Sequence record: PQ471516.1
DNA: 64,000 nt
Strand: one strand, 5' to 3'
The position numbers and the translations under genes are program-made. The notes under the pieces are model-generated. The model saw only the letters and a list, made by a program, of their open reading frames with translations, did not search any database and was not told the DNA's origin. Numbering within the stretch: position 1 is the first letter of the stretch; each line of letters opens with the position of its first letter. This document shows, one piece after another, positions 302-19,534 of the stretch.

Positions 302-697
302 TAGTAATTATACGCTTTTTCAGGATCAAGTCAATACCTAAAAACAAAATAATTGAAAATAATTTAACGCGTTTAAACGGCCCGTAAAGCCCTGGAATGA
401 TTGGAATGGTGCAAATGTATAGCTTAGGTGTATTAATGCGTTAGAATGCGTCTGAGGCCGTTTTACGGGGTATAGGGATGATTTGGTGGATTGATTCAGT
501 ACTGAATGATAGTACTACTATATAGAAAGATAGTTCCCCTGGATGGTTGCAGTACTGAATGATAGTTCCCCTATATAGAGAGAAAACTATTTTAAAAGTA
601 CATGTAGAAAGTACTTGCAAACTAAGTTTAACGGCGTATAATGTTTTACATCGAGAGCGGGAACACTTCCCGCTACATATTACGAGAGATTAAAACG

Positions 698-1060
698 ATG
701 GCGACTCAAATCACTAAAATTATTGCTAACCTGGTTAACTTCCGCGACGAGATGAAAGATCTTCCGGCTGAAACGGTAAAAATTCACATCGCAGCTTATC
801 GGGAACTTATTGCAATGTTGCCGCTTAAGCGTGAACAATACGCCGCTACCGTGATGCTTGATGCGATGATCCATAAGATGATCGCCAGTGATTTGACGAT
901 GGTTTATCAGTACATGGGCGAAAAATTCTCGGTGTATAGTAAACCAGTACCAGGAATGGAAAGTACAGAAGTATTACACGGTTTAAATTTAAAACAAGAT
1001 GCATGGGATAATATGCCTCGTTTCCTGGTATGGGCTGACAGTGGCAAAATTTACGAATAA
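698..1060 (+). CDS. Hypothetical early protein
   Basis: ORF track 641..1060; start moved to ATG after promoter, hairpin and RBS. Confidence 0.8.
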   Translation: MATQITKIIANLVNFRDEMKDLPAETVKIHIAAYRELIAMLPLKREQYAATVMLDAMIHKMIASDLTMVYQYMGEKFSVYSKPVPGMESTEVLHGLNLKQDAWDNMPRFLVWADSGKIYE

Positions 1061-1154
1061 GTTTAATAAAGTACTTGCATACTAAGTTAAAACAAGTATA
1101 ATACTTTCTATCAGGTGGGGAATAGTTCCCCACTATAATTAAGAGATTAATTTT

Positions 1155-1388
1155 ATGAGTACTATTTTAACTGTTTCTCAATCCGTTGCACTGACTGACC
1201 TATTAAACGCTTTAAGCCGTTGCACTGAGGTTGGCTTGTTTGATGTGGTTGACGTTGCACCGGACGTTATTAATCATTTTTGTGATGCGATGGAAGAATG
1301 TAAGGAAGATGATAGCCGTATGATGGCGGTCGCCTTTGAGGAAGTACAGCCAGGTGAGATCAAAGGTTTACCAGTACTGAAAAAATAG
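1155..1388 (+). CDS. Hypothetical early protein
   Basis: ORF behind own promoter cassette. Confidence 0.8.
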   Translation: MSTILTVSQSVALTDLLNALSRCTEVGLFDVVDVAPDVINHFCDAMEECKEDDSRMMAVAFEEVQPGEIKGLPVLKK

Positions 1389-1470
1389 TACTTGCAAACT
1401 AAGTTTAAAAGCGTATAATACTTTACATCAGGTGGGGAATAGTTCCCCACTATATAAGAGGATTAAAAAA

Positions 1471-1710
1471 ATGGCTAAATCAAAAATGTTCTTAGGTCAC
1501 AAAAACAAAACTCATTGGAATGTAAGCCTTTGGATTAATAACGATGAGTCATTGTACCGGTTGGCCCAGGACTTTATTAACGATAGCACTAATCGCAATG
1601 ATGCGGCCCGTCATATGATGTTATTTTTAGAACAGACTGGACAAGATAAAACACCGGACGGATTCAAATATAGCACTACTGCGATCCGTGCTGCGATGGT
1701 TGGAATGTAA
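1471..1710 (+). CDS. Hypothetical early protein, paralogue of 3871..4110
   Basis: RBS GAGGA; shares GHKNKTHWNVSLWINN and TPDGFKYSTTAIRAAMVGM. Confidence 0.85.
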   Translation: MAKSKMFLGHKNKTHWNVSLWINNDESLYRLAQDFINDSTNRNDAARHMMLFLEQTGQDKTPDGFKYSTTAIRAAMVGM

Positions 1711-1795
1711 TAGAATTTATTTAAAGTACTATCATTTTTTGCGATAGTACTTTATAATAGTGTTTTATTCATACACCAACGATAAGGGTAACAGC

Positions 1796-2062
1796 ATGAA
1801 TATTAAGTATTTTGCGACGCGTGAACAAGCTCGGATCGCCGCACGCCAGGACGGGGCAACGTTTAAAGATATGGGAGCGGGATCGGCAAGTGGTAAACGT
1901 TGGGCCATTGTAAAGCGTAGTACCGCCAGATCATTACAGTACTGGCTATCTGCTTTAAAGCGTCCTGATAGTGTATCGCGTCGAGTGGTAGAAATAAAGC
2001 ACGACCGCAAGGGCAATCGCGTTACCGTGTACCGTACTAAAAAGATAGCAGTACTTGAATAA
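1796..2062 (+). CDS. Basic hypothetical protein, paralogue of 14694..15098
   Basis: Shares K(Y/F)FATREQARI and HDRKGNRVTVY. Confidence 0.8.
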   Translation: MNIKYFATREQARIAARQDGATFKDMGAGSASGKRWAIVKRSTARSLQYWLSALKRPDSVSRRVVEIKHDRKGNRVTVYRTKKIAVLE

Positions 2063-2149
2063 AAAGTACTTGCAAACTAAGTTTAAAAGCGTATAATGTT
2101 TTACATCGAGAGCGGGAATAGTTCCCGCCTATAACCAGGAGTAATAAAA

Positions 2150-2380
2150 ATGGCTAATATGTATATGACCGAAGTTAAAACCGTAAAAGATACTACCACT
2201 AATAAAACTACTTACTTACAGCGGATCTGTGGTGTATGGCAACGTATCAGCAAATCAAAGTACTTTAAATTAACATCATATGCAAACCGTTCGGATTCAT
2301 TCAGTACTGAAATAAAAGGTAATAAAGTACACCAATACGGCACTTATTATTATTACAGCCTGGACGCGATTGCAGTATAA
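2150..2380 (+). CDS. Hypothetical early protein
   Basis: Promoter cassette, RBS AGGAG. Confidence 0.8.
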   Translation: MANMYMTEVKTVKDTTTNKTTYLQRICGVWQRISKSKYFKLTSYANRSDSFSTEIKGNKVHQYGTYYYYSLDAIAV

Positions 2381-2445
2381 GCAGTTTACAAATCTTTACA
2401 ATTGCCGGTATTGACTTATTTTGTCAGTACTGGCATAATGTATTC

Positions 2446-2490
2446 ATTGGCAGATAAGCCGTAGCCCATAGGGTGCGGGAGTGTATCTAT
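2446..2490 (+). ncRNA. Candidate small RNA, family copy D
   Basis: TTGACT 2411-N17-CATAAT 2434; GGC-AGAUAA-GCC; GCCC-AUA-GGGUGC. Confidence 0.55.
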
Positions 2491-2510
2491 AGAAAAAGTA
2501 GTTTATTACA

Positions 2511-2548
2511 GTTACAATTGTGCACCCGGTGGGTTAGCTGTTGTCATG
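2511..2548 (-). ncRNA. Candidate small RNA, family copy E
   Basis: Minus promoter TTGACA(2583-2578)-N17-CATAAT(2560-2555); ACCC-ACC-GGGUGCACAAUUGUAAC. Confidence 0.55.
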
Positions 2549-2664
2549 GGGTATATTATGCCAGTACTTGATAATGCTGTCAATACTTTTTTTTACTATT
2601 CAGTACAGAAAACTATTTTTAAAAAGTACTTGCAAACTATGTTTAAAGGCGTATAATGTTTTAC

Positions 2665-2739
2665 ATCAGGACGGGGAACGAAATAAGTAACTTCCCGTTA
2701 AGTAGCCCAGGAGTAAGGCACACGAAAAACTCCCCTGAT
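2665..2739 (+). ncRNA. Candidate pseudoknotted RNA motif, copy 1
   Basis: Starts right after promoter 2630-2657; AUCAGG/CCUGAU, ACGGG/CCCGU, pseudoknot GCC/GGC plus GGAG/CUCC. Confidence 0.65.
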
Positions 2740-2806
2740 AAAATAGTTTGACAATTGTTTTTAAAAGCGTATAATACTTACATCGATACTGAATGAGGGT
2801 TACAAA

Positions 2807-3418
2807 ATGAAAACTATCACTACTACTACTTTTGTTATGGCTTTTTCTGAACTGACCGCAGAACAACAAGCGGCGGCTATCGAACTGGTTCGGGAACGTG
2901 AAAAAAACTTAAACGATGATTATTTTTCTGAAAGTGAAATTGAATACTATAAAGAAACAGTACTACCGGAATATGGCATAGATGAAGCTGAATTGCAATT
3001 CAGTGGTTTTTGGTCCCAGGGTGACGGTGCATCAATCAGTACTGACCACGTTGACGCAGTGAAGTTTTTACGCAAGATTAAAGCATTAACTAAGTATCGC
3101 TCGATCCGTCACCTGCTGAATGAAGATGATTTGGCGATGAGTGTAAAGCGTTCTCACTCCCACTACTCGCATGAGAATACTGTAAGCGGGTACATTGAAT
3201 CGGCTTACACTGATTTAACCGCAAAACAAGAAACGTTAGTTAATGAGCTTGAGGAACTACTCACTGAAACTATTCGTGAATTATCCCGCAAGTTGTACCG
3301 TGATTTAGAGAATGCATATGAGGATCAATTCACTACTGAAAACATTACGGCACTGATTGAGGGTAACGAATATCAATTCAATGTCATTGATGGTGTAGTA
3401 GAATCAATCGAATATTAA
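2807..3418 (+). CDS. Acidic hypothetical early protein
   Basis: 203-aa ORF, RBS GAGGG, promoter 2748-2775; FSGFWSQGDGAS segment. Confidence 0.85.
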   Translation: MKTITTTTFVMAFSELTAEQQAAAIELVREREKNLNDDYFSESEIEYYKETVLPEYGIDEAELQFSGFWSQGDGASISTDHVDAVKFLRKIKALTKYRSIRHLLNEDDLAMSVKRSHSHYSHENTVSGYIESAYTDLTAKQETLVNELEELLTETIRELSRKLYRDLENAYEDQFTTENITALIEGNEYQFNVIDGVVESIEY

Positions 3419-3511
3419 TTTAAAAAGTACTTGCAAACTAAGTTTAAAGGCGTATAATACTTTATATCGAGGCGGGGAATGGTTCCCCGCTCACACTAAA
3501 AGGGCAACAAA

Positions 3512-3778
3512 ATGAAAACTTTAAATATCACAACTGCACATCAATTGGTTCGGGATGCGATGGATCATGTGCAAGATTTCTTCCCTGATGTAAGTGTAGT
3601 GACTTATGAAAAAGGTACTTGGACTTATTCAACAATCAACGGTTATGAGCCTGATTTTGATGATCTGGAAGAAATGGAATTTAATTTTGATCTGCTGAAT
3701 GATGCCGCCCGTGAAGTGGAAAACGATGTTCAATACATTGATGGAGTAGTCGCACCTGATGCAGTAAAAGGATTATAA
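3512..3778 (+). CDS. Hypothetical early protein
   Basis: Promoter cassette. Confidence 0.8.
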   Translation: MKTLNITTAHQLVRDAMDHVQDFFPDVSVVTYEKGTWTYSTINGYEPDFDDLEEMEFNFDLLNDAAREVENDVQYIDGVVAPDAVKGL

Positions 3779-3870
3779 AATTTAAAAAGTACTTGCATTG
3801 TAGTTAGATTAACGTATAATACTTTATATCGAGGCGGGGAGTGGTTCCCCGCTCAAACGAGGATTAAAAA

Positions 3871-4110
3871 ATGGCTAGTACTAAAACTTACAACGGACAC
3901 AAAAACAAAACTCATTGGAATGTTTCCTTATGGATTAATAACGGTGAGTCATTGTATCGGCTTGCTCAAAGTTGCATTGCACAAAGTAAAACTAAAGATA
4001 TTGCTGCGGAATGTATGTACCGCAGATTAAAAGCCAACGGTACTACAACCACGCCAGACGGCTTTAAGTATAGCACTACTGCGATCCGTGCTGCGATGGT
4101 TGGAATGTAA
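3871..4110 (+). CDS. Hypothetical early protein, paralogue of 1471..1710
   Basis: Near-identical 3' end at DNA level. Confidence 0.85.
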   Translation: MASTKTYNGHKNKTHWNVSLWINNGESLYRLAQSCIAQSKTKDIAAECMYRRLKANGTTTTPDGFKYSTTAIRAAMVGM

Positions 4111-4168
4111 TATTCAGTACTGAATCAATGGCGGGGAATGGTTCCCGCCTTTATTGAGGGTTTATCTA

Positions 4169-4447
4169 ATGAGTAAAGTAATTAACTATACAGTACTAAG
4201 CAAGTCATTGTCTATAAGTGAGTGCACCAATGGTTTTTGGCTGTACGACGAAACGCGTGGCATGAATTTAGCTATGCAGGAGAAAACTGCTGATGCGGCA
4301 TATCTTAAAGCACTGGAATACTACCAGGAACGTTTGAAGGAAGTAGAAAACAATTATCAAAATTTAAAAGAGAAAGTAGATCATTTCGTCGGTCAATTCG
4401 TTGACGATGACGGGCACTACTGCGACCGTTGCGGATCTTACAGTTAA
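4169..4447 (+). CDS. Hypothetical protein with C-terminal CxxC
   Basis: RBS GAGGG; hairpin 4131-4149 upstream. Confidence 0.75.
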   Translation: MSKVINYTVLSKSLSISECTNGFWLYDETRGMNLAMQEKTADAAYLKALEYYQERLKEVENNYQNLKEKVDHFVGQFVDDDGHYCDRCGSYS

Positions 4448-4464
4448 GTACTGAGGATTATCTA

Positions 4465-4668
4465 ATGAGTGATTTAATTGAACGTATCAAAGAGCTTGAA
4501 GAAAAAGAATTGCAGTTGATCGGCTTACAGAATAAAATCTATCATGATTTGGGGAGTTTTATCAATGCCTGGGATAGTGGCGATCCTGATGCGTTACCTG
4601 CTAACCGCACGGCAATGATCAATGATGTGCGTGGTGTCTTTGATTATGTTTTAAAGCAATTAAATTAA
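4465..4668 (+). CDS. Hypothetical protein
   Basis: RBS GAGGA; start adjusted. Confidence 0.75.
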   Translation: MSDLIERIKELEEKELQLIGLQNKIYHDLGSFINAWDSGDPDALPANRTAMINDVRGVFDYVLKQLN

Positions 4669-4755
4669 AAAAAGTACTTGCAATTAGTTTTTAGTACTGT
4701 ATAATGGTTTACATCAAAGGGAGAAATGGTTCTCCCTGGTAATGAGGAAAATACA

Positions 4756-4977
4756 ATGGCTAATATCACTACTCTTTCCCAACTGGAAGCACTGGTTAAA
4801 TCTATGCGGGAACATGCCGACAAAATCGGCGTACAAGATCCAGCCGTTTGCTTTTGCGACGAATTGAATGATGATACCCTGGTAATAGCAGAAGTCCAGG
4901 ACGTTTCTAACTATTCCTCGCGTTACACTGGCGGCGTAGCAAATAAAGGTGACTTCTGTTTATACCTTACAAAATAA
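4756..4977 (+). CDS. Hypothetical early protein
   Basis: Promoter cassette, RBS GAGGA; start adjusted. Confidence 0.8.
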   Translation: MANITTLSQLEALVKSMREHADKIGVQDPAVCFCDELNDDTLVIAEVQDVSNYSSRYTGGVANKGDFCLYLTK

Positions 4978-5077: not shown

Positions 5078-5220
5078 GTAGTAATTATGCCAGTACTGGA
5101 TGCACTTGTCAACAATTATTTTTCAAATACTTTTTATTAAAATACTTGCAATTAGTTTTTAAACGCGTATAATGTTTTGCATAGGGGGAGCGGTTCCCCT
5201 GGTAACTAAGGAATAAGAAA

Positions 5221-5457
5221 ATGGTCGAACAAATCAAATCAACGTCTTCGAATGTAACGGGAACGGTAGCACACTTTACTAGTGATGAATCGCGGGGCGT
5301 TCCCTATTGTGCTGTACATGTAAACACTGAGGGTAACTACTGGTTTACGGTTTACGGATCATATTCATTTGGACGGCCAGGGCATCAAAAAATTCTGGAT
5401 AAAGTACAGCCAACGGGTAAAAATATCACTGCTGAAATGTTTTATAAAAAATCATAA
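5221..5457 (+). CDS. Hypothetical early protein
   Basis: Promoter cassette, RBS AAGGA. Confidence 0.8.
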   Translation: MVEQIKSTSSNVTGTVAHFTSDESRGVPYCAVHVNTEGNYWFTVYGSYSFGRPGHQKILDKVQPTGKNITAEMFYKKS

Positions 5458-5542
5458 AGTACTTGCAATTAGTTTTCAGTACTGTATAATCTTTTACATC
5501 GACACGGGAAAACGGTTTCCCCTGGTAACTAAGGATAATCAA

Positions 5543-5842
5543 ATGAAAGTTGCAATCATCGCCCTGGCTTTATCTGTATCGTCTTTCGCTGTTAACGCTT
5601 CCGTTGATGTACCGCGTGAAAAATTCATTCAGTGCACTGTTGCAATGACTAACGAGGAAACGGCTGAGATCGTTACCAAATCCCTGGAACTGGCCCCTGC
5701 GATGTTTGCCAATGGCCCGTATCATGAAGAAGATGATCAGGGTAGCACGACCATCTATTACGATGCAAAAAGTAAACGCGGTTCAGTTACTGTAATGGAT
5801 ACTGAGAAAGTTACATTCACGGGAGTAATTAATTGTTTTTAA
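5543..5842 (+). CDS. Exported protein with signal peptide
   Basis: MKVAIIALALSVSSFAVNA fits a Sec signal peptide; RBS AAGGA; start adjusted from 5369. Confidence 0.7.
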   Translation: MKVAIIALALSVSSFAVNASVDVPREKFIQCTVAMTNEETAEIVTKSLELAPAMFANGPYHEEDDQGSTTIYYDAKSKRGSVTVMDTEKVTFTGVINCF

Positions 5843-6600: not shown

Positions 6601-6837
6601 GTGTTTATCGTTTACCAGGCCACCAGCACCGCCTAGAAACGATTCTAACGCATTAAACTGATTATCCGATGCATTGCCCTAGCTGGTGGCGTTAAGGCTG
6701 TAAGAACGCGATTGAGAGCGTTTAAAGTATTTTGCAAAAAGTAATAAAAAGTACTTGCACGATTAAGAGATTAGCGTATAATGTTTTACATCGAGAGGGG
6801 GAAACGGTTCTCCTTCCAAATCAAAGGAATCAAAACA

Positions 6838-7065
6838 ATGGCTATTATCATTACTCGCGTATCTGGTACTACTGGCAACGAACAAGTAGTTGCAGTCATT
6901 ACCAACAAGGAAGGTGCGGAATTGCAAAATGCAATGAATACCTGGGCCGTTAATGAGTTCGGTCAGTGGGCAAGTGTAGCATACATTGAAACCTATCAAG
7001 TGCCGTCGATTAGTTTAACTGATTTGGGCGTTGAGCGTATCCTTTGCCTTGATGAATTAAATTAA
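6838..7065 (+). CDS. Hypothetical early protein
   Basis: Promoter cassette; start adjusted. Confidence 0.8.
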   Translation: MAIIITRVSGTTGNEQVVAVITNKEGAELQNAMNTWAVNEFGQWASVAYIETYQVPSISLTDLGVERILCLDELN

Positions 7066-7151
7066 AAAAGTACTTGCAAAGTAAATCGAATAAAGTATAA
7101 TACATTACATCAAGGGGAGAAAATGGTTCTCCCCACTACAAGGAAACTAAA

Positions 7152-7295
7152 ATGAAAACTTGTCAATGTGGTCAGAAATCTATTACGGGTTTAAAGCGGG
7201 GCGTTGCTCTTTGCCAGTACCATTATAATTTACAAGTATGGGGTAAAGAATGGGCCGACCAGGTGGAAGCAATCAAGAAAGCAAAAAGTAAGTAA
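7152..7295 (+). CDS. Small Cys/His protein (47 aa)
   Basis: Own cassette, RBS AAGGA; CQCG...CQYH; below ORF-track cutoff. Confidence 0.7.
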   Translation: MKTCQCGQKSITGLKRGVALCQYHYNLQVWGKEWADQVEAIKKAKSK

Positions 7296-8679: not shown

Positions 8680-8889
8680 ATGCTTACTGTACAGGATAAG
8701 ATCGACATCTTAAAGGTTAATATGTATGTGATTGATGCAGTACCTGGTAAAGTATTTGCATACGATGACACCACTGTAAGCGATTTCTACTATAGCCAGG
8801 ACGTGGGGGATCTTTCTGTACAGTCGGTTATTGAAAACGTAGTTAATGCAGCGTATGAGCATTTACTTTCAAATAGTACTTGCAATTAG
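8680..8889 (+). CDS. Hypothetical protein
   Basis: ORF track, follows previous gene. Confidence 0.7.
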   Translation: MLTVQDKIDILKVNMYVIDAVPGKVFAYDDTTVSDFYYSQDVGDLSVQSVIENVVNAAYEHLLSNSTCN

Positions 8890-9185
8890 TTTTTAAACGC
8901 GTATAATGTTTTACATGAAGGGGAGAAATGATTCTCCCCACTAATTAAGGAATATGAAATGAAAGCATCAAAAAAGAGTAATACTAAGAAAGCACGTTCA
9001 CCTTTCGCTGGGGTATTCCCTTTACGTTTCGTTGATGAAGTAGTTTCCTACCCGCCGGGCCTTACTCCTGAGATGGTAGAAAGTTTGCGTAAATCTAAAA
9101 AATAGTACTTGCAATTAGTTTTTAAACGCGTATAATGTTTTACATGAAGGGGAGAAATGGTTCTCCCAATAACAGGAGAATCAAA

Positions 9186-9338
9186 ATGAAACAATACAAC
9201 GCTCGGTTTGATGTTACTATCGGTAACGGCAAAGGTCAATTCTCTTTCAGTACTCGCAAAAGTTATACAGAAAACTTCCTGCGTAATTGTGCACTGACCG
9301 CCGCACAAATTAAACATTATTTTCAGGCTAAAAAATGA
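9186..9338 (+). CDS. Small hypothetical protein
   Basis: Promoter cassette, RBS AGGAG; start adjusted. Confidence 0.7.
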   Translation: MKQYNARFDVTIGNGKGQFSFSTRKSYTENFLRNCALTAAQIKHYFQAKK

Positions 9339-9660: not shown

Positions 9661-9778
9661 TATAATGTTTGAGTACTGAAAACTATTTTTAAAAAGTACT
9701 TGCAAACTATCTCAATAAGCGTATAATGTTTTACATCGAAAGGGGAAACGGTTTCCCCTGGTAATAAGGAAACAAATC

Positions 9779-10120
9779 ATGACTATCTCAATTGCTCAAT
9801 CTAACTTTGAAAATGAAATCATCGCCCAGGCACTGCGTTTAAATGATGGTCGGGCCGAAATTAATTACGGTTTCAATTCAGGCGGTTGCGAAAACTATCA
9901 GTACTTTGTAACGGCTGATGGCGGTGTCCTGGGTATCAATACAGTTATTGTAAACATCCAAAAAATTAATTTCAATGATCCAGACGATAGCCAGTTTTAC
10001 ATCACTGGCGTAGACGTGAACTATGAGGATGACTCACTAACTGATGATCACACTGGCGAGCGGTTAGAAAGTGCATACGGTGAAGATGATTATCAGTCCG
10101 GTCCAGAAGATTTCGAATAA
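9779..10120 (+). CDS. Acidic hypothetical early protein
   Basis: Promoter cassette, RBS AAGGA. Confidence 0.8.
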   Translation: MTISIAQSNFENEIIAQALRLNDGRAEINYGFNSGGCENYQYFVTADGGVLGINTVIVNIQKINFNDPDDSQFYITGVDVNYEDDSLTDDHTGERLESAYGEDDYQSGPEDFE

Positions 10121-10216
10121 TATAAAAAAATAGTTTGACAATAGATTATAGTACTGTATAATAGTTTACATCAAGGGGAGAAAAACTTCTCCCCACTAAC
10201 AGAGAGAGAAAACAAA

Positions 10217-10429
10217 ATGGCTAATATCCGGTCGAAATTAAAAAATGCAAAACAAGTTTTATTTTCAGATCATGAATACTTTAATAAAGATATTACAGGA
10301 GTTACAAGTATCAAGGAAGTAAAAGAAAAAACCGGCGTTTTGTGTGATGTGCGATTAGTTGGGACATTTGGGAATAACGTGCTATATCGCTGCGGTGATT
10401 ACAATTTTACACTGACTATCATTAACTAA
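10217..10429 (+). CDS. Hypothetical early protein
   Basis: Promoter cassette. Confidence 0.75.
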   Translation: MANIRSKLKNAKQVLFSDHEYFNKDITGVTSIKEVKEKTGVLCDVRLVGTFGNNVLYRCGDYNFTLTIIN

Positions 10430-11887: not shown

Positions 11888-12244
11888 ATGGGTATACAAC
11901 ATATCACGCGTACTACTGACAACGGCGAGATCACTGGTTATCAAGTACAGGGCAAAGTAGCACAATTGCAGTACTGGTTTGTTAAACGTGGAATCATTGC
12001 ACCGGATCTTGATTATGACCGTGTAGCGTTTATTGATTCTCTTTATGTTGATCCTGATAGTCGGGGCAATGGTGAAGGTAACGAATTAATGAATGCCTTT
12101 ATCGATGCCGCCGATGATTCAGATTGTATCATCTTAGAATGCGATACGGGAGAAGATAACGCCTTCAATCTTAAAGAATGGTACGAAGGTTTCGGATTCG
12201 AGGTACTGATCGATAGTGAATATCCTATCATGATTTTATCATAG
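11888..12244 (+). CDS. GNAT-family acetyltransferase
   Basis: IDSLYVDPDSRGNGEGNELM acetyl-CoA motif A. Confidence 0.85.
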   Translation: MGIQHITRTTDNGEITGYQVQGKVAQLQYWFVKRGIIAPDLDYDRVAFIDSLYVDPDSRGNGEGNELMNAFIDAADDSDCIILECDTGEDNAFNLKEWYEGFGFEVLIDSEYPIMILS

Positions 12245-12322
12245 TACTTGCATTTAGTTTTCAGTACTGTTATAGTACTTACATCAAGGGGAAACATCTT
12301 CCCCTACTAAGAGGAAATAAAA

Positions 12323-12511
12323 ATGGAAAACTTATCAAGTATTTTAGTACAAGATGATTTCGGTAATCCTGGAAGTGCTATCATTGTTCGGGGCAATAAA
12401 GCAACGTTTGTTATTGCTGGTGGACCCGTACAGCGTAGCATTAAAAATAATGCTGTTACCATTAATAATGTACGCTATCGCTTAGATAAAGAATTAATTC
12501 ATAAACTGTAA
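12323..12511 (+). CDS. Hypothetical early protein
   Basis: Promoter cassette, RBS GAGGA. Confidence 0.8.
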   Translation: MENLSSILVQDDFGNPGSAIIVRGNKATFVIAGGPVQRSIKNNAVTINNVRYRLDKELIHKL

Positions 12512-12596
12512 AAAAGTACTGGACAATAGATTATAGTACTGTATAATAGTTTACATGAAGGGGAGAAATGATTCTCCCCACTAAGAGGAAAGAAAA

Positions 12597-12809
12597 ATGC
12601 AAGGTCAACTAATCGTTCGTAAATGGTCTGATACTAACGAAAAACCGTGGGATGTACAATACATCGCCCCCAATGGTGAATCCAGATATCAACCAGGTGT
12701 AACGCATAGTACTGAGCAATTCGCCGCCGCTCATCGTGAACGTCTGTTACAATCAATGCAGTTCGGTTCCGGTGAAAAATTCATTCAGGATCATTGGCTG
12801 AAAGATTAA
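12597..12809 (+). CDS. Hypothetical early protein
   Basis: Promoter cassette, RBS GAGGA. Confidence 0.8.
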   Translation: MQGQLIVRKWSDTNEKPWDVQYIAPNGESRYQPGVTHSTEQFAAAHRERLLQSMQFGSGEKFIQDHWLKD

Positions 12810-13354
12810 AAAGTACTTGCAATTAGTTTTCAGTACTGTATAATGTTTTACATGAAGGGGAGAATAGTTCTCCCCACTACTAGGAAACAGCATTATGCAC
12901 ATGAATCCGTTTATAGTAGTAATTGCAATCATGATGGCTGTACAGGCCGTGTTAGAATACTTAAGCAAAGCAGGAGTTATCTAAATGATCCAGGTAGAAT
13001 TATCAGTACTCAAAGATCTGTTTTATCGGTTAGGCACTACTGGAGAATACCCGAAAGGTGATACCGCTAAACTATACACTGCATTGGATGTATGGCAACG
13101 TAACGAACTGGCTAACGCCTGGCGTAAAGGTAAATCAGAGGGGATTGCAGCATGAAAGAATTCTTATTCGAAGTAGTGTTTAACCGCGTAGGTGGAAACC
13201 AATTAATTCGCTCAAGTGGTCACAATGTTAATCAAGCGTGGACTAACTTAAAACGAATGTACCCGGACGCGATTACATATCGTAACCCGAAAGAAGTTTA
13301 AAAAGAATTGAAAAAAAGGATTGACTCAGGTCAGTCCTTTTGCTATTATATATG

Positions 13355-13484: not shown

Positions 13485-13557
13485 ATCAGGACGGGGAACG
13501 AAACAAGTAACCCCGTTAAGTAGTCCAGGAGTAAGACATACGAAAACCTCCCCTGAT
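13485..13557 (+). ncRNA. Candidate pseudoknotted RNA motif, copy 3
   Basis: After promoter 13450-13477; AUCAGG/CCUGAU, ACGGGG/CCCCGU, GUC/GAC plus GGAG/CUCC. Confidence 0.65.
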
Positions 13558-13645
13558 AAAATAGTTTGACAATAGTTTTTAGTACTGTATAATATTTTAC
13601 ATCAAGTGGGGAATAGTTCCCCACCTAACAAAGAGAGAAATTAAA

Positions 13646-13921
13646 ATGCGGATTCTACTTACAGCTAACGAAATCGAGCAAGTACTGACTACTAATCTGG
13701 AACAATGGAAACGTGATGCAGATATCCAGGCGGTACAATGGCTTAACGATAAGTTAACGCCGGATGACTTAAGCAAGATTGTAGATCCTCAATTCTACGA
13801 AGATATTCACGACACCGCGTTAAGCGTCGAGGATGTACTTGATAAGCACTTTATTGATACAGATTTACAGGTTTACGGTCGTAAAAACTTTATCACTATT
13901 CACGACATTTACAATACTTAA
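13646..13921 (+). CDS. Hypothetical early protein
   Basis: Promoter cassette. Confidence 0.8.
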   Translation: MRILLTANEIEQVLTTNLEQWKRDADIQAVQWLNDKLTPDDLSKIVDPQFYEDIHDTALSVEDVLDKHFIDTDLQVYGRKNFITIHDIYNT

Positions 13922-14009
13922 GTATTGACAAAGTATCTTAGTACTGTATAATAGTTTACATCAAGTGAGGGGAAACGGTTCCCCTCCTAACAAAGAGAGA
14001 GAAATAAAA

Positions 14010-14192
14010 ATGGCTAAGTGCACTATCTGCAAGAAAGAAATAGTATTAGTTCCAAGTGCCCGTGAACGTGCCGCTCGGTTTGGTGGCAAAGCGTCAGACT
14101 ATACAAAAATGTTTACTGCCCATACAGCTTGCCAGGTAGCAAAACGTTCACAAGAAAGCGTAGAATTAATGCGTAAACTTTCCAAAAAATAA
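14010..14192 (+). CDS. Small putative Zn-binding protein
   Basis: CTIC...HTAC; promoter cassette; start adjusted. Confidence 0.75.
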   Translation: MAKCTICKKEIVLVPSARERAARFGGKASDYTKMFTAHTACQVAKRSQESVELMRKLSKK

Positions 14193-14279
14193 GTATTGAC
14201 AAAGTATCTTAGTACTGTATAATAGTTTACATCAAGCGAGGGGAATGGTTCCCCTCCTAACAAAGAGAGAGAAATAAAA

Positions 14280-14603
14280 ATGGCTATGATCCTTACCCAG
14301 AAAGTAGAACTGAAAATTGTAACCTCCTTTGACATTAAAGTTAATCGGTGGACTGATAGCCACGGCAATACTTACCACTCCTGCTACGTGTCCGCATTGA
14401 TTGGTGATCGCTGGGAAGACCTGGGACACGAAACCTTTACATACGGTTACGGCACACAAGGCGAGTACACGGGTTTAGAAATCATTAAGGAAACTGTAAT
14501 AGGTTTCAACCCGAAAGAGAAAGTACTACACAGAATTGAGAAAGAGATCAACAAAGAAATTACAGTTCGCTACTACGATGTAAAACGTAAGAAAGACATG
14601 TAA
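14280..14603 (+). CDS. Hypothetical protein, paralogue of 7677..8000
   Basis: Shared motifs; cassette nearly identical to the one before 14010. Confidence 0.85.
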   Translation: MAMILTQKVELKIVTSFDIKVNRWTDSHGNTYHSCYVSALIGDRWEDLGHETFTYGYGTQGEYTGLEIIKETVIGFNPKEKVLHRIEKEINKEITVRYYDVKRKKDM

Positions 14604-15149: not shown

Positions 15150-15163
15150 ATGGGAGAAACAAA

Positions 15164-15418
15164 ATGATTAAGGTTCAACTATCAAACGATAATGTATTAC
15201 GGGTACACTATAAAGCTCCACAAAGAATCATCACAAAGGCCGTACAGCTTGCTAATGAGTTTATTAATGGTAGTCTATTACCCAGGAAGTTAAGCAACGG
15301 GAAACTACGCGTTATCGATGTAGACACTAACAATAGAATAGTAATTGAGAGTACAGGAAAGATAAACCTTTATGAACACCAACAATATAACAAGAAAATA
15401 AAACTAATATCACGTTGA
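15164..15418 (+). CDS. Possible ParE-like (RelE/ParE fold) protein
   Basis: KA..L...F..G...RKL....VIDV...RIV......LYEHQQYN resembles the ParE-like toxin family pattern (from memory). Confidence 0.45.
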   Translation: MIKVQLSNDNVLRVHYKAPQRIITKAVQLANEFINGSLLPRKLSNGKLRVIDVDTNNRIVIESTGKINLYEHQQYNKKIKLISR

Positions 15419-15471
15419 CAGTACTCAATTGTTTTAGTACTATGTACATATACCAACACGGGAGAAACAAA

Positions 15472-15690
15472 ATGAAATTATCTAAAATCGAAAAGAAAAC
15501 TATTGATGAAGCAGTTAAGCACGGTTATACATTTCGTAATGATTCACATTTTACCAATTTTCAACAAGGGTATCGTACTATTAAAAAACTTATTGACAAA
15601 GGTTTATTAGTTGAAGTCAATAACGGGAACGGTATCGAGTATCAACCAACACAGGACGCATTTTATTTTAAGAAATATAATATTATCTAA
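15472..15690 (+). CDS. Hypothetical early protein
   Basis: Promoter 15415, RBS GGAG; start adjusted. Confidence 0.75.
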   Translation: MKLSKIEKKTIDEAVKHGYTFRNDSHFTNFQQGYRTIKKLIDKGLLVEVNNGNGIEYQPTQDAFYFKKYNII

Positions 15691-15748
15691 TTGACAGTAC
15701 TCAAATGTTTTAGTACTATGTACATATACCAACACGGGGGAAAACAAA

Positions 15749-15991
15749 ATGATTACTTTAGAAAAACGTATCAAAGAAACTACATCGCTGGTGGAACTGT
15801 TAACAGTACTGAAATGTAAAACAACACCATTCAGCACGCCGGACTTTATTAATATGGTTGATGTTAATGGTCGCTATCGCATCACGGTCGAACAAGGAGC
15901 GGCTAAAGTATTCAGTACTAAAAACACTAAGGAAGTGATTCACGCGGTCAGTACTAAAAAAGTAGTTGCCATTTATAGTAAAGTACTGTAA
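15749..15991 (+). CDS. Hypothetical early protein
   Basis: Promoter 15691. Confidence 0.75.
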   Translation: MITLEKRIKETTSLVELLTVLKCKTTPFSTPDFINMVDVNGRYRITVEQGAAKVFSTKNTKEVIHAVSTKKVVAIYSKVL

Positions 15992-16022
15992 GATAGTTTC
16001 ATTAACTCAAGGAGATAACACA

Positions 16023-16607
16023 ATGCGTAACTATACTAAATTCATCCGTACACTTCATGCAATGGAAACTAATAAAGAGATCCTTACAGCTTGTCGGTTA
16101 GCTGGACTGGAGATCGTCGGTGCGGGTTCTTCCCGTATTGTATTCGCTTTGAATGATCGGTTAGTGATTAAGGTCGCAAATTGTGACGCTGGCGTTGAAC
16201 AAAATGAAACTGAATGTAAGGTATGGAATTTTTTAGATTATGACCGTCCACACCTTAAACAGTACTTTGCAAAGGTGCATATGCATTTATGCGATCCTGA
16301 TAATATGTTTATCGTTATGGATCGGTTGAGTACTGCAAGTAAAGGCAGTGTGAAGCACGTTAACGCGTGCAACGAATTAAAGTACAATATTAAACGTAAT
16401 GCTATTGAACGCCAGCACCGCTTTGCTGATGCTCTCAATCACGTTGATGATACATTATCAACACTAACAATCAGAGATATCAGAAAACAGAATATCGGCC
16501 AGGATCGTAATGGACTTATTAAAGTACTTGATTACGGTTTAACCCGCAATATCTGGAATCAGTACTATAAAAAACGTGATGTTAATGCGATAACTATAAC
16601 ACGATAA
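16023..16607 (+). CDS. Protein kinase-like (PKL fold) protein
   Basis: GAGSSR glycine loop, VIKVA, EQNETE, RDIRKQNIG, VLDYG; RBS AAGGAG; start adjusted. Confidence 0.75.
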   Translation: MRNYTKFIRTLHAMETNKEILTACRLAGLEIVGAGSSRIVFALNDRLVIKVANCDAGVEQNETECKVWNFLDYDRPHLKQYFAKVHMHLCDPDNMFIVMDRLSTASKGSVKHVNACNELKYNIKRNAIERQHRFADALNHVDDTLSTLTIRDIRKQNIGQDRNGLIKVLDYGLTRNIWNQYYKKRDVNAITITR

Positions 16608-16659
16608 AAAAGATTAAAAAAGGGATTGACTCCGGTCAGTCCCTTTGCTATTATATATT

Positions 16660-16708
16660 CATTGAGAGATAACTCACTGACCCATAGGGTGCATAAGTGT
16701 ATCTATTA
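16660..16708 (+). ncRNA. Candidate small RNA, family copy J
   Basis: TTGACT 16626-N17-TATTAT 16649; UGAG-AGAUAA-CUCA; ACCC-AUA-GGGUGCAUAAGUGUAUCU. Confidence 0.6.
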
Positions 16709-16829
16709 TATAAGTATTCAGTACTGGAAACTATTTTTAAAAAGTACTTGCATTGTACTTAGAATCAAGTATAATGTTTTATATCGAGAGGGGGAAATGG
16801 TTCTCCCTGGTACATTAAGGAATAAAATC

Positions 16830-17051
16830 ATGACTACAATGACTTGCATTCACGCTTCAAACCTGCTTAATGATGCGGCCTTTAATGTTGAAACAGAATA
16901 TCAATGTTATCGGGATGAAAATAAAAAAGTTTTTGTAGTTGATAATAATGGTTTCCATATTGAATTGCAATCCGGCTTCACTGGCGTTGATGGTAAATCA
17001 GTATGGGGCGTACAGGATGATAAAGGTACATATCATTTTAAACGTAATTAA
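16830..17051 (+). CDS. Hypothetical early protein
   Basis: Promoter cassette, RBS AAGGA; start adjusted. Confidence 0.8.
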   Translation: MTTMTCIHASNLLNDAAFNVETEYQCYRDENKKVFVVDNNGFHIELQSGFTGVDGKSVWGVQDDKGTYHFKRN

Positions 17052-17137
17052 GTATTGACAAAGTATATCAGTACTGTATAATAGTTTACATCAAGGGGAG
17101 AATAGTTCTCCCCACACCAATAAAAGGAAACAAAATT

Positions 17138-17410
17138 ATGTCCAGCTACTCCGCTACTATGATCATCAAAGATATGAACGGTAATCCTACTTCTGCTGGT
17201 GGATCATTTGGAAACATTAACTTAGATGGTCGGTTATCCATGCAATCAGCCATTGATGCAGCGAAAGAAGTTTTTAAGAATGAATGTACTGTAAGCAAGC
17301 TGGATTATATGGGCTTCGCTATCGAGAAAACTAATCGTTTTGTGGACTACAAAAAGCCTATGATGATTGATACTAACCTGAAAGCTAACGAAGTGGAATA
17401 CTTATTATGA
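17138..17410 (+). CDS. Hypothetical early protein
   Basis: Promoter cassette, RBS AAGGA. Confidence 0.8.
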   Translation: MSSYSATMIIKDMNGNPTSAGGSFGNINLDGRLSMQSAIDAAKEVFKNECTVSKLDYMGFAIEKTNRFVDYKKPMMIDTNLKANEVEYLL

Positions 17411-17598
17411 CAGTAGAAGAAGTTAAAAAAGTACTGGCAGTACTACGCTATCATAATCATTGTAAGGTGAAGAATGATCCTGATTATCTTGATTCATCCC
17501 TGGAGGAAGACACCTTAAACGCGATAAGCTATATGCAAACATTAGCAAAGCGTATGACCGAAAAGAATAGGCCGGACTATATAGGAAATAAAATTTAA
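17407..17598 (+). CDS. Hypothetical protein
   Basis: ATGA-coupled to previous ORF. Confidence 0.7.
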   Translation: MTVEEVKKVLAVLRYHNHCKVKNDPDYLDSSLEEDTLNAISYMQTLAKRMTEKNRPDYIGNKI

Positions 17599-17685
17599 AA
17601 AGTACTTGCATTGTAGTTAGATTAACGTATAATGTTTTATATCGAGAGGGGGAAATGGTTTCCCCTCAAGTCCAGGAGATACACC

Positions 17686-17949
17686 ATGAACACTATCGAA
17701 ATCACTATCAATGCACACGTATACGACAACGTAGTACTGCAAACTACTATGACCGCTAATGATACCAGTACTTTGCGGAATACTGTTATTAGTGCCGTAT
17801 GTGCTGCAATCGGTGATGTATCCCTGGAAAATGCAGAACATATCAACAACGGTTTCACTATGTGCAAGCGTGATAACGCAAAACATATCATCGTGGAAGG
17901 TTACGGCGGTGTAGAATTTAATGTTTATATGAAAAAAGTACTTGCATAA
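17686..17949 (+). CDS. Hypothetical early protein
   Basis: Promoter cassette, RBS AGGAG; start adjusted. Confidence 0.8.
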   Translation: MNTIEITINAHVYDNVVLQTTMTANDTSTLRNTVISAVCAAIGDVSLENAEHINNGFTMCKRDNAKHIIVEGYGGVEFNVYMKKVLA

Positions 17950-18016
17950 TAACTAAAACAAAGTATAATGTTTTGCATAGGGGGAGATATCCTCCCCCAC
18001 TAAAAGGAGTAATAAA

Positions 18017-18241
18017 ATGGCTAACTTTGATGAACTGATGCGGGAAGTAGCTAACCTGGCAGAAGAGAAGAAATCATTCGATTCTATCTATAACACCGCT
18101 CACCGTGATTCAGTACTGGCATGTAACCAGGATCAAAAAGATGAACTAATCGCCACCTATCATGAAGCATGGAAGTACTACCGACAATGGGAGAAAGAAG
18201 AAAGTGAGTCTACCATTGACGGCCTCAATAATCTAATCTAA
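18017..18241 (+). CDS. Hypothetical early protein
   Basis: Promoter cassette, RBS AAGGAG. Confidence 0.8.
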   Translation: MANFDELMREVANLAEEKKSFDSIYNTAHRDSVLACNQDQKDELIATYHEAWKYYRQWEKEESESTIDGLNNLI

Positions 18242-18317
18242 AAGTTTTATTTCAGTACTATTGACATAGCTTGATAGTACTGATGTAATAACTTTACTAA
18301 CTACAAGGGGAAACATA

Positions 18318-18575
18318 ATGGAACAGTTCACACAATATCGGGTAAATCATCAAGCTATGGCCTACGTAGAAGACCATAAAACGTTACCAGTACTGCAACC
18401 AGTTAAAGGCCATATCTATCGTGCAATGTCGTGGTGTACGGCTCAGGATGGCTATAAAACCGTAGCCGTTGGTATGTATTGCGGTAATGGTGAATGGTTT
18501 GATCCAAATAATCCGGTAGCCATTGACAGTACTGAACAAATGAAATGGGCCGACTATATCGAGGATATCTCATAA
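18318..18575 (+). CDS. Hypothetical early protein
   Basis: Promoter 18261. Confidence 0.75.
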   Translation: MEQFTQYRVNHQAMAYVEDHKTLPVLQPVKGHIYRAMSWCTAQDGYKTVAVGMYCGNGEWFDPNNPVAIDSTEQMKWADYIEDIS

Positions 18576-18664
18576 AACTATTTGACAGTACTAACCAGTA
18601 ATGTATAATGTTTTACATAGAGCGGGGGAATAGTTCTCCCGCCAATAGTTTGGAGTAAAACATT

Positions 18665-18865
18665 ATGTCTATCGCTATCGCCCTGGTTGAAGTACTGAAA
18701 GAAGCTAAAGCCAACCTTATCGATGTACAGATTAAGGAATTGCAAAACGGCTTAATCGGCTGTACTTGTACCGCTGGTGGAGCGGCAGACTATCGAGAAC
18801 ACGAATCACTCGAATCACTGGTTCGGTATCTTACCATGATCGTTGATGATTGGAGAATCATCTAA
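18665..18865 (+). CDS. Hypothetical early protein
   Basis: Promoter cassette, RBS GGAG. Confidence 0.8.
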   Translation: MSIAIALVEVLKEAKANLIDVQIKELQNGLIGCTCTAGGAADYREHESLESLVRYLTMIVDDWRII

Positions 18866-18921
18866 CAAAAAAGAATAAAAAAAGGGATTGACTCAGGTCA
18901 GTCCCTTTGCTATTATATACG

Positions 18922-18962
18922 CATAGACAAAAACTAGCCCACAGGGTGCATAAGTGTATCCA
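18922..18962 (+). ncRNA. Candidate small RNA, family copy K
   Basis: TTGACT 18888-N17-TATTAT 18911; GCCC-ACA-GGGUGCAUAAGUGUAUC. Confidence 0.6.
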
Positions 18963-19112
18963 AAATATATAGTTAATAACGGTGAGTAACTATCTGCTGG
19001 TGGAGTGAAAACTATTAATAAAAAAAAGTATTGACAAAGTATATCAGTACTGCAATAATGTATCTCGTAGGGCGGCAATGGTGCGACGGCCCACAAAGTT
19101 AGGAGATTCAAA

Positions 19113-19445
19113 ATGACTACTTCAATCGCTATCGTTAAAGCTTTCATCCGTACTAATGTTTCCTCTGTATTCATCGACGGCCTCGACCGTAACGTAGAAT
19201 ACTCAATCATTATCGCACAAACGGCAAACGGTTCTCGGTACATCCTTAATGATAGTGAAGCAAATCACTACTACTTCACTAAAGCCACTGGCTTTAAACG
19301 CATCGATGCTGATGTAGTATACGCTAAGATGAATAAGCTGGTAGACAAGATTAACGCGAAAGGTACTATCGATTTACAGTACTGGACCGAAACCGATCCA
19401 GAATATGGATCTCACCGCTACCTGAATCCGGGTATTAAAATGTAA
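19113..19445 (+). CDS. Hypothetical early protein
   Basis: Promoter 19031, RBS AGGAG. Confidence 0.8.
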   Translation: MTTSIAIVKAFIRTNVSSVFIDGLDRNVEYSIIIAQTANGSRYILNDSEANHYYFTKATGFKRIDADVVYAKMNKLVDKINAKGTIDLQYWTETDPEYGSHRYLNPGIKM

Positions 19446-19534
19446 AAAGTACTTGCATAGTACTTAGATTCATGTATAATGTTTTACATAGAGAGGGGGA
19501 AATGGTTCTCCCTCCTAAATTAAGGAGTTTTATC

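What the first reader, a model, noticed from the sequence alone, without database searches (positions are those of the whole stretch)
615..19530. About 40 promoter + 5'-hairpin + RBS cassettes (PeSL-like)
Seen: nearly every early gene has its own promoter, a conserved TTTACATC/TTTATATC start region and, in most cases, a G-rich-first hairpin a few nt after +1 (e.g. GCGGGAA-CAC-TTCCCGC 657-673, GTGGGGAA-TAG-TTCCCCAC 1115-1133) with compensated stems. Established: promoter-early-stem-loop cassettes mediate modular gene shuffling in RB49-type T4-like phages, and 5' stem-loops hinder RppH/RNase E decay. Inference: the hairpin may also act as a self tag that spares phage mRNA during host shut-off.
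Basis: partly seen in the sequence, partly recalled or inferred. Interest (0 to 1): 0.65.

Follow-up and report, generated by a model that had tools for sequence, protein, structure and literature searches.

The report
Mobile early-gene promoter–hairpin cassettes, jumbo phage
The first 20 kb of this giant E. coli phage carries 27 near-identical "plug-and-play" units (strong host-type promoter, small RNA hairpin, ribosome site), each driving one tiny gene. Related phages, and even unrelated ones, have gained, lost and reshuffled genes by recombining at these units.

Summary
The window is the start of an Asteriusvirus (RaK2-like) jumbo coliphage, 99.9% identical to phage Turkey5. Between 600 and 19,540 the + strand holds about 47 sigma70-type promoters. 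Of these, 27 are full cassettes: A-tract/AGTACT, -35, 16-nt spacer, TATAAT, a TTTACATC-type start region, a 6-9 bp G-rich-first hairpin, an A-rich linker, SD and ATG. In the whole 351-kb genome a strict pattern hits 26 times, all co-oriented and all inside this region, which matches the ~20.7-kb direct terminal repeat of close relatives.

The hairpin is under selection for pairing on the transcribed strand, shown by covariation and by G:U far outnumbering A:C. It lacks a U-tract and lies after the predicted +1. RB49 PeSL stem-loops instead sit in or before the promoter and terminate, so this is PeSL-like in evolutionary role but not in architecture.

Modular shuffling is strongly supported. 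63% of homology-block ends against four relatives fall in cassettes (15% of the sequence). Single-gene indels leave one hybrid cassette. Cassette-flanked genes recur in scrambled order in Vequintavirinae and Justusliebigvirus.

The hairpin's molecular role is inferred, most likely a 5' mRNA stabiliser or RBS insulator. The "self-tag during host shut-off" idea has no support.

The parts
600..700 (+). cassette c615 (hairpin 656-674)
   Evidence: no + strand gene upstream
1060..1157 (+). cassette c1075 (hairpin 1114-1134)
1377..1473 (+). cassette c1392 (hairpin 1431-1451, identical to c1075)
2055..2152 (+). cassette c2070 (hairpin 2112-2128)
3416..3514 (+). cassette c3431 (hairpin 3471-3491)
3778..3873 (+). 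cassette c3793 (hairpin 3833-3853)
4663..4758 (+). cassette c4678 (hairpin 4718-4737)
5131..5223 (+). cassette c5146 (hairpin 5182-5201, internal G:U); follows terminator 4982-5004
5448..5545 (+). cassette c5463 (hairpin 5506-5521)
6740..6840 (+). cassette c6755 (hairpin 6795-6816, two G:U); follows terminator 6574-6595
7059..7154 (+). cassette c7074 (hairpin 7114-7134)
8865..8961 (+). cassette c8880 (hairpin 8920-8939)
9094..9188 (+). cassette c9109 (hairpin 9150-9167)
9685..9781 (+). cassette c9700 (hairpin 9741-9759)
10120..10219 (+). cassette c10135 (hairpin 10175-10194)
12233..12325 (+). cassette c12248 (hairpin 12287-12305; -10 TATAGT)
12505..12599 (+). cassette c12520 (hairpin 12560-12579)
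12802..12897 (+). cassette c12817 (hairpin 12857-12875)
13551..13648 (+). cassette c13566 (hairpin 13606-13624)
13910..14012 (+). cassette c13925 (hairpin 13967-13986)
14181..14282 (+). cassette c14196 (hairpin 14238-14256)
16733..16832 (+). cassette c16748 (hairpin 16789-16808, G:U)
17040..17140 (+). cassette c17055 (hairpin 17095-17113); site of an extra gene in ph0011/G17
17591..17688 (+). cassette c17606 (hairpin 17646-17667, G:U)
17927..18019 (+). cassette c17942 (hairpin 17980-17998)
18567..18667 (+). cassette c18582 (hairpin 18622-18642, G:U)
19438..19537 (+). cassette c19453 (hairpin 19493-19514, G:U); last copy
19016..19115 (+). atypical cassette: promoter 19031 with a different G/C-rich 5' hairpin; a similar one occurs in Justusliebigvirus
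4130..4149 (+). same hairpin family without a promoter but with a T-run: terminator-like (also 4982-5004 and 15123-15143)

Best explanation
These are portable early-gene expression cassettes of an Asteriusvirus jumbo phage. They are packed, all in one orientation, into the roughly 20.7-kb terminal-repeat region.

Each unit is about 100 bp and comprises:
- an A-rich/AGTACT upstream element;
- a near-consensus sigma70 promoter with a 16-nt spacer, often TG-extended;
- a conserved initial transcribed sequence;
- a 6-9 bp GC-rich RNA hairpin starting about +5;
- an A-rich linker;
- an SD and ATG for one small, mostly ORFan gene (median 77 aa).

Two things happen.

(1) Shown by comparison: because the units are near-identical direct repeats, homologous recombination between them deletes, inserts or replaces single genes and leaves one hybrid cassette. 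Cassette-flanked genes also move between phage lineages.

(2) Inferred: the hairpin acts in the RNA. Its most likely role is to sit close to the 5' end of every primary early transcript, slow 5'-end-dependent decay (RppH/RNase E), and insulate the ribosome site from whatever sequence lies upstream. In read-through transcripts it may double as a 3' exonuclease barrier for the upstream message. It is not a terminator.
For: Identity and setting. The window is 99.9% identical to Escherichia phage Turkey5, and its relatives are PBECO4, 121Q and G17. In G17 the cassette region occurs at both record ends, offset 350,149, which gives a repeat of 20,668 bp. Sharanji's DTR measured by PhageTerm is also 20,668 bp (PMC11895373).

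Cassettes. There are 27 full copies. The strict pattern gives 26 of 26 whole-genome hits on the + strand in 637-19,512, with 0 for the control. The covariance model gives 24 of 25 hits in the region. Geometry is tight: 12.1 +/- 1.4 nt from the -10 to the stem, and 19.7 +/- 2.3 nt from the stem to the ATG.

RNA-level selection. 6 of 9 pairs covary (0/500 shuffles reach the score). Under a test that treats both mismatch types alike, internal G:T occurs 25 times against A:C 5 times, and 23 against 1 at core positions 2-4. The G:U pair sits at the position where A-U and G-C alternate. Cassettes that follow strong terminators, or have no upstream gene (c615, c5146, c6755, c9700, c16748), still keep the hairpin. 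SD to AUG is 73% unpaired in the MFE folds.

Shuffling. 48 of 76 block ends against four relatives lie in cassettes, which are 15% of the region; 15 lie in other intergenic DNA, which is 18%. Many joints show both flanks aligning to one cassette, with overlaps of 45-103 bp. For gene 1155-1388, ph0011 carries a hybrid that crosses over in or after the hairpin, and 121Q a hybrid that crosses over at the -35. Cassettes plus genes recur at 70-88% identity in scrambled order in Vequintavirinae W70 and Justusliebigvirus muut/VEcB.
Against: No transcription start site has been mapped. The only RNA-library data available are assembled wastewater contigs, which cannot show 5' ends.

With +1 at the conserved YA, 8 nt after the -10, the unpaired 5' tail is about 5 nt (1-8). 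That is long enough for RppH-type enzymes, which need two or three unpaired nucleotides (stated for the Bacillus enzyme in PMC3997798). RNase E is reported to bypass simple orthogonal stem-loops (PMC9943677). A classical ompA-type 5' block is therefore not assured.

Gene-sized indels must end in intergenic DNA anyway, so part of the breakpoint enrichment is expected without any special mechanism. Block ends shared between relatives are not independent events.

The inner pairs of the stem are almost invariant. That could mean recognition by a factor rather than mere stability.
Confidence: 0.6

Rival explanations
1. True PeSL function: the stem-loop is a terminator or attenuator. It would stop transcription coming from the upstream gene just before, or as, the next promoter fires.
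For: The same hairpin family does serve as terminator-like elements when followed by a T-run (4130, 4982, 15123). RB49 PeSL stem-loops terminate as well as rrnB T1 (PMC2839356).
Against: The 27 cassette hairpins lie downstream of their own promoter, so they would also attenuate their own gene. They carry 0-3 T in the next 8 nt, and none passes the terminator scan. Separate canonical terminators exist in the region.
Confidence: 0.08
2. Early-class RNA tag: the hairpin is bound by a trans-acting protein, from host or phage. That protein would coordinately stabilise, translate or later shut off the terminal-repeat early mRNAs. This covers the first reader's 'self tag'.
For: The hairpin is exclusive to the early region. 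The loop-proximal pairs are nearly invariant: columns 11-29 are G-C in 76 of 76, and columns 15-25 are A-U in 71 of 71. The same core sequence is kept in three phage lineages.
Against: No candidate binding protein was identified; the early proteins are almost all without family matches. Sequence identity can equally come from common descent and gene conversion between repeats. Loops vary in sequence and length (12 types, 3-5 nt). Middle and late phage mRNAs lack the hairpin, so it cannot mark 'phage versus host' in general.
Confidence: 0.15
3. DNA-level palindrome: an operator for a dimeric repressor that turns off the early promoters.
For: The inverted repeat sits at about +5 to +25 of every cassette promoter, a classic operator position. 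A small 'transcriptional regulator' gene is annotated at 15472-15690.
Against: There is strand asymmetry: G:T 25 against A:C 5, and 23 against 1 in the core. The outer pairs change by compensation and loop length varies from 3 to 5 nt. Both fit RNA pairing, not a fixed DNA half-site spacing.
Confidence: 0.05
4. Neutral passenger: the hairpin is merely part of a repeat that spreads by duplication and recombination, and has no function of its own.
For: The cassettes are clearly paralogous and recombine.
Against: Pairing is preserved through double substitutions well beyond the shuffled and slid controls. Hairpins with different stems occupy the same place in other phages.
Confidence: 0.04

Closest known systems
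PeSL (promoter-early stem-loop) cassettes of T4-like phages RB49/phi1, PST and nt-1 (Arbiol 2010, PMC2839356; Comeau 2014, PMC4122927)
   Same: A repeated motif of about 100 bp with a strong sigma70 promoter, AT-rich upstream DNA, a G-run/C-run stem-loop, SD and ATG. The motifs are concentrated in ORFan-rich hyperplastic DNA. Indels between close relatives are bounded by the motifs, with crossovers inside them.
   Different: Here the stem-loop is transcribed as the 5' UTR of its own gene and has no U-tract. In PeSLs it lies in or before the promoter and terminates. The host genome here is a RaK2-like jumbo phage, all copies sit in the terminal repeat, and cassettes are shared with two other phage lineages. 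Four separate elements in this window (9571, 13314, 16619, 18881) do have the true PeSL layout.
5'-terminal stem-loop mRNA stabilisers (ompA 5' UTR type; Bouvet & Belasco 1992 and Arnold 1998, as cited in PMC3997798)
   Same: A stable hairpin near the 5' end of an mRNA, upstream of an accessible ribosome site.
   Different: The classical effect needs the 5' end itself to be paired or nearly so. Here the predicted tail is about 5 nt and the TSS is unmapped. No half-life data exist.
Phage T5 pre-early region in the terminal repeat (own knowledge, not tested here)
   Same: A block of small host-takeover genes with strong host-type promoters inside a long direct terminal repeat, which is presumably the first DNA to enter the cell.
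   Different: No sequence relationship was shown, and T5 promoters are not known to me to carry this hairpin cassette.
Lambda nut (boxA/boxB) promoter-proximal RNA hairpins
   Same: A small promoter-proximal RNA hairpin in early transcripts.
   Different: No boxA-like sequence lies within 45 nt of any hairpin. The loops are not GNRA-like. There is one hairpin per gene rather than one per operon.

Membership tests
PeSL (RB49/phi1 type) | Strong sigma70-like early promoter with an AT-rich upstream region | tested here: met
   TTGCAA/TTGACA-16-TATAAT with an A-tract upstream; 10 promoters match the consensus 12/12.
PeSL (RB49/phi1 type) | Stem-loop placed between -35 and -10, over the -10, upstream of the -35, or just before the start site | tested here: not met
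   The stem begins 12.1 +/- 1.4 nt after the -10, downstream of the predicted +1.
PeSL (RB49/phi1 type) | Stem-loop is an effective transcription terminator or attenuator | tested here: not met
   By sequence criteria only: 0-3 T in the 8 nt after the stem, and none of the 27 is called by the terminator scan. Functional termination is not testable here.
PeSL (RB49/phi1 type) | Clustered in hyperplastic regions rich in small ORFans | tested here: met
   The first genes have a median length of 77 aa. Only 2 of the 10 proteins scanned pass Pfam's curated thresholds, namely DksA/TraR and GNAT; a third, at 16023-16607, matches protein-kinase families weakly, below the cut-off.
PeSL (RB49/phi1 type) | Indels and replacements between close relatives are bounded by the motifs, with crossovers inside them | tested here: met
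   48 of 76 block ends lie in cassettes. Hybrid cassettes with two different crossover points are seen.
PeSL (RB49/phi1 type) | Recombination between motifs yields mini-circles detectable by inverse PCR | not testable with these tools
   Only assembled contigs were available.
5'-terminal stem-loop stabiliser (ompA type) | Hairpin at or within a few nucleotides of the mRNA 5' end | tested here: inconclusive
   The predicted tail has a median of 5 nt (1-8), assuming +1 at the conserved YA. No TSS data exist.
5'-terminal stem-loop stabiliser (ompA type) | Hairpin lengthens mRNA half-life in an RNase E/RppH-dependent way | not testable with these tools
   This needs a rifampicin chase with mutant and compensated hairpins.
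Lambda-type nut site | boxA motif next to a boxB hairpin | tested here: not met
   0 boxA-like matches (<= 1 mismatch) within 45 nt of the 27 hairpins.
Any Rfam family | Covariance-model match | tested here: not met
   Only three sub-threshold chance-level hits in 1-21,000.

The most novel reading that the evidence does not exclude
The promoter + 5' hairpin + SD unit is a shared 'expression standard' for immediate-early genes of several unrelated large coliphages (Asteriusvirus, Munch-like Salmonella jumbo phages, Vequintavirinae, Justusliebigvirus). Its hairpin would be a class tag read by a common, probably host, factor. That would make any gene placed between two cassettes immediately expressible in any of these phages, so the cassettes act as the vehicle of an inter-family early-gene mobilome located in the terminal repeat.
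Probability: 0.15. Interest if true: 0.75.

Novelty: new variant of a known kind. Interest (0 to 1): 0.5.

Why it matters
PeSLs were described only in T4-like phages, and as promoter-terminator composites. This window shows the same evolutionary device, repeated regulatory cassettes acting as recombination handles for ORFan genes, in three new respects:
- It occurs in a RaK2-like jumbo phage.
- It has a different layout, with the hairpin in the 5' UTR.
- It fills the whole direct terminal repeat.

There is also direct comparative evidence that cassette-flanked early genes are exchanged with two other phage lineages. Together these give a concrete mechanism for the rapid turnover of host-takeover and anti-defence ORFans in therapeutic-type coliphages.

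The cassettes are also a natural set of 27 graded promoter/5'-UTR parts, and a testable case of a conserved 5' hairpin whose role in mRNA fate during infection is unknown.

I found no description of these cassettes in the Asteriusvirus/RaK2-group papers I could read or in the rV5 paper. That is not an exhaustive search.

Tried and rejected
I searched the Turkey5 record through its locus handle instead.
- Rfam: nothing above chance.
- RNA evidence: the one run search gave only wastewater libraries kept as contigs. Laying four metatranscriptomes on 600-6500 (5,901 letters, within the operators' limit) gave fragmented contigs. Many joints and loose ends fell at the cassettes (for example 625>5167, 2080>2740, 3471>5456). 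That is compatible with recombinant relatives or with assembly ambiguity at repeats, and gives no information on starts, strand or expression. It is not used as support.
- The MAFFT alignment of whole cassettes misregistered the stems. I replaced it with a gap-free seed, a covariance model and a model-fitted alignment, which leans towards the structure. The slid and shuffled controls, and an independent WC-only script, were used to offset that bias.
- A first G:U/A:C count that let both mismatch types extend the stems ran into the flanks. It was redone with isolated internal mismatches only.
- Terminator, nut-site and DNA-operator readings were considered and rejected, as set out under the rivals.
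- One literature search was too broad and gave nothing useful.

Full report
**What the window is.** Megablast places the window at the start of Escherichia phage Turkey5 (351 kb), at 99.9% identity and in the same coordinates. Other Asteriusvirus jumbo phages (ph0011, PBECO4, 121Q, G17, Sharanji) match at 88-95% in patches. The Turkey5 annotation lists 55 small + strand genes between 698 and 20,207. Nearly all are 'hypothetical', apart from a DksA/TraR zinc finger, a GNAT acetyltransferase, a small regulator and a kinase-like protein.

**Checking the observation.** Reading the sequence and three independent scans give about 47 sigma70-type promoters on the + strand between 615 and 19,475. Ten of them match the 12-base consensus perfectly.

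Twenty-seven are complete cassettes, made of these elements in order:
- an A-tract plus AGTACT;
- a -35 (TTGCAA, TTGACA or TTGCAT);
- a 16-nt spacer, often ending in TG;
- TATAAT;
- a (G/A)TTTACATC-type start region;
- a hairpin with a G-rich 5' arm (core GGGGAA...TTCCCC or GGGGAGAA...TTCTCCCC, 6-9 pairs, loop of 3-5 nt);
- an A-rich linker;
- SD and ATG.

Of the remaining promoters:
- one (19031) has a different hairpin;
- three have an ~85-nt structured leader;
- six on this strand belong to a promoter + CCCAYMGGGTGC family;
- about ten have short unstructured leaders.

So 'about 40' describes the promoters, and full hairpin cassettes number 27.

**Is it more than chance?** A strict pattern (TATART, 7-16 nt, GGGRR, 3-9 nt, YYCCC) hits the complete 351-kb record 26 times. 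All hits are on the + strand within 637-19,512, and the reversed control pattern gives zero. A covariance model built from 12 gap-free hairpins finds no + strand hit beyond 19,519 in the 64-kb window. In the whole genome, 24 of its 25 hits at E <= 0.01 lie in the region. The hairpins average -11.6 kcal/mol, about 5 sd below shuffles.

**Where the cassettes lie.** In the G17 record every cassette hit occurs twice, 350,149 bp apart. The region therefore lies in a 20,668-bp direct terminal repeat. The Sharanji paper reports a DTR of 20,668 bp by PhageTerm, and vB_Ec-M-J is annotated with direct terminal repeats over the homologous stretch. Mapping G17 onto the window puts the repeat from about 1 kb before the window start to about 20,430. 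The cassette field is therefore essentially the terminal repeat. This rests on homology and was not measured for this phage.

**RNA or DNA?** I aligned 76 distinct hairpins from this phage, four Asteriusvirus relatives and three phages of other lineages to the model. Six of nine pairs show changes on both sides. There are 82 doubly changed cells against 25 +/- 8 in shuffles (0/500). The covariation score is 0.387, against 0.187 for shuffles and at most 0.147 when the partner is slid.

A separate script counted only Watson-Crick pairs and treated G:T and A:C alike. It finds 25 internal G:T but 5 A:C. At the three core positions the count is 23 to 1. G:U sits exactly at the position where A-U and G-C alternate between copies. 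These counts are not independent events, because the copies are paralogous. Even so, the asymmetry argues for pairing in the transcript and against a double-stranded operator.

**Not a terminator, and not a PeSL in layout.** In RB49/phi1 the PeSL stem-loop lies mostly between -35 and -10 or over the -10, sometimes upstream of the -35 or just before the start site. It terminates as well as rrnB T1. Here the stem starts 12.1 +/- 1.4 nt after the -10 and ends 19.7 +/- 2.3 nt before the ATG. It is followed by 0-3 T in 8 nt, and none of the 27 is called terminator-like.

The same scan does call separate terminators. Three are promoter-less members of the same hairpin family with a T-run (4130, 4982, 15123). 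Four are 12-bp hairpins whose 5' arm contains the -35 of a TTGACT-17-TATTAT promoter (9571, 13314, 16619, 18881). These four, not the 27 cassettes, have the genuine PeSL architecture.

**Shuffling.** I chained BLAST blocks of window 1-21,000 against ph0011, PBECO4, 121Q and G17. They give 76 block ends inside 600-20,200:

| Location | Block ends | Share of region |
|---|---|---|
| Hairpin cassettes | 48 | 15% |
| Other intergenic DNA | 15 | 18% |
| Gene interiors | 13 | 67% |

Many joints have both flanking blocks aligning to the same single cassette in the shorter genome, with overlaps of 45-103 bp. Typical cases:
- gene 1155-1388 is missing from ph0011, 121Q and G17;
- gene 3512-3778 is missing from ph0011 and PBECO4;
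- an extra gene sits at c17055 in ph0011 and G17.

For the first case the alignment is explicit. ph0011's single cassette follows c1075 through the hairpin and then follows c1392. 121Q's single cassette switches already at the -35. These are two independent crossovers inside the cassette, the same kind of joints Arbiol et al. sequenced in PeSL mini-circles. The caveat is that gene-sized indels must end between genes anyway. The fourfold excess over other intergenic DNA and the hybrid cassettes are the specific evidence.

**Beyond the genus.** A single 102-nt cassette finds 70 phage records. Besides Asteriusvirus, these include Vequintavirinae (W70), Justusliebigvirus (muut, VEcB and others) and Salmonella jumbo phage Munch.

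The fetched loci show the same promoter, start region, hairpin and SD layout there. Some copies have different compensated stems. About ten window genes recur at 69-88% nucleotide identity, but in a scrambled order. In W70 the order corresponds to window positions 13.4, 6.8, 10.2, 7.3, 1.5/3.9, 9.9, 5.2 and 18.7 kb. RaK2 has the promoter type but no model hit.

**What the hairpin does (inferred).** It is promoter-linked: it never occurs without a promoter unless it has a T-run. It is kept in cassettes that follow terminators or have no upstream gene, so it matters for the cassette's own transcript. It leaves the SD and AUG mostly unpaired.

The best-fitting role is a 5'-proximal stability and insulation element, with a possible second use as a 3' barrier in read-through RNA. 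Two points weaken this. The predicted unpaired tail is about 5 nt, and RNase E is reported to step over simple stem-loops. I put about 0.4 on stabilisation proper.

The 'self tag' idea is unsupported. The tag is absent from the other ~330 kb of the phage, no partner is evident, and no expression data exist.

**Literature.** The papers I could read on CBB, Sharanji, phAPEC6 and rV5 predict RpoD-type promoters or DTRs, but none mentions a promoter-proximal hairpin cassette. I therefore rate this a new variant of a known kind, noting that the library is incomplete.

Noticed in passing
whole window 1-64000: AGTACT occurs 275 times against 21 expected from base composition (13-fold), by far the most over-represented palindromic hexamer, often as CAGTACTG. 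Density is 6.4/kb in 1-20,400 and 3.3/kb beyond. It sits at the -35 edge and in the spacer of the cassettes, but also inside ORFs. No explanation; it could be a binding or modification site.
   Followed up: partly
window + strand 2411, 9578, 11242, 13321, 16626, 18888; - strand 334, 119, 2583, 5112: Ten copies of a promoter followed about 30 nt later by an invariant CCCAYMGGGTGC core (alignment A5). The - strand copy at 5112 runs into a terminator (5003-4983), giving an sRNA-like unit of about 100 nt. No Rfam match.
   Followed up: partly
window 9571-9606, 13314-13349, 16619-16654, 18881-18916: Composite terminator-promoters: a 12-bp hairpin whose 5' arm contains the -35 TTGACT, with a T-run leading into a TATTAT -10. 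This is the genuine PeSL layout, and it coexists with the 5'-hairpin cassettes.
   Followed up: partly
window 2630-2745, 13450-13560 (diverged copy 5930-6050); L007:5577-5690: A cassette-type promoter followed by an ~85-nt structured non-coding leader. Its 5' AUCAGG...GGGG pairs with a 3' CUCCCCUGAU, and a second promoter for the gene follows immediately. It is conserved in Justusliebigvirus muut. No Rfam match.
   Followed up: partly
window 4726, 16797, 19502: Three CDS starts annotated in the Turkey5 record are the AUG inside the hairpin loop (AAUGG). An SD-spaced, in-frame ATG lies 30-33 nt downstream (4756, 16830, 19535) and is the more plausible start.
   Followed up: partly
window 20208-20350: A tandem direct repeat of about 66 bp, just before the point (~20,430) where the G17 record, and hence its terminal repeat, ends. 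It may mark the DTR boundary.
   Followed up: no
L009:1505-1626 (RaK2): In RaK2 the same promoter type (TTGACA-16-TGTATAAT) drives a tRNA-like pseudo-tRNA annotation instead of a hairpin + ORF.
   Followed up: no
window 16023-16607: An early-region protein with weak protein-kinase matches (Pfam E 0.002-0.003, below the cut-off), annotated as a Ser/Thr kinase in Turkey5. From my own knowledge, the T7 0.7 kinase modifies RNase E, so a link to mRNA stability is conceivable but untested.
   Followed up: no
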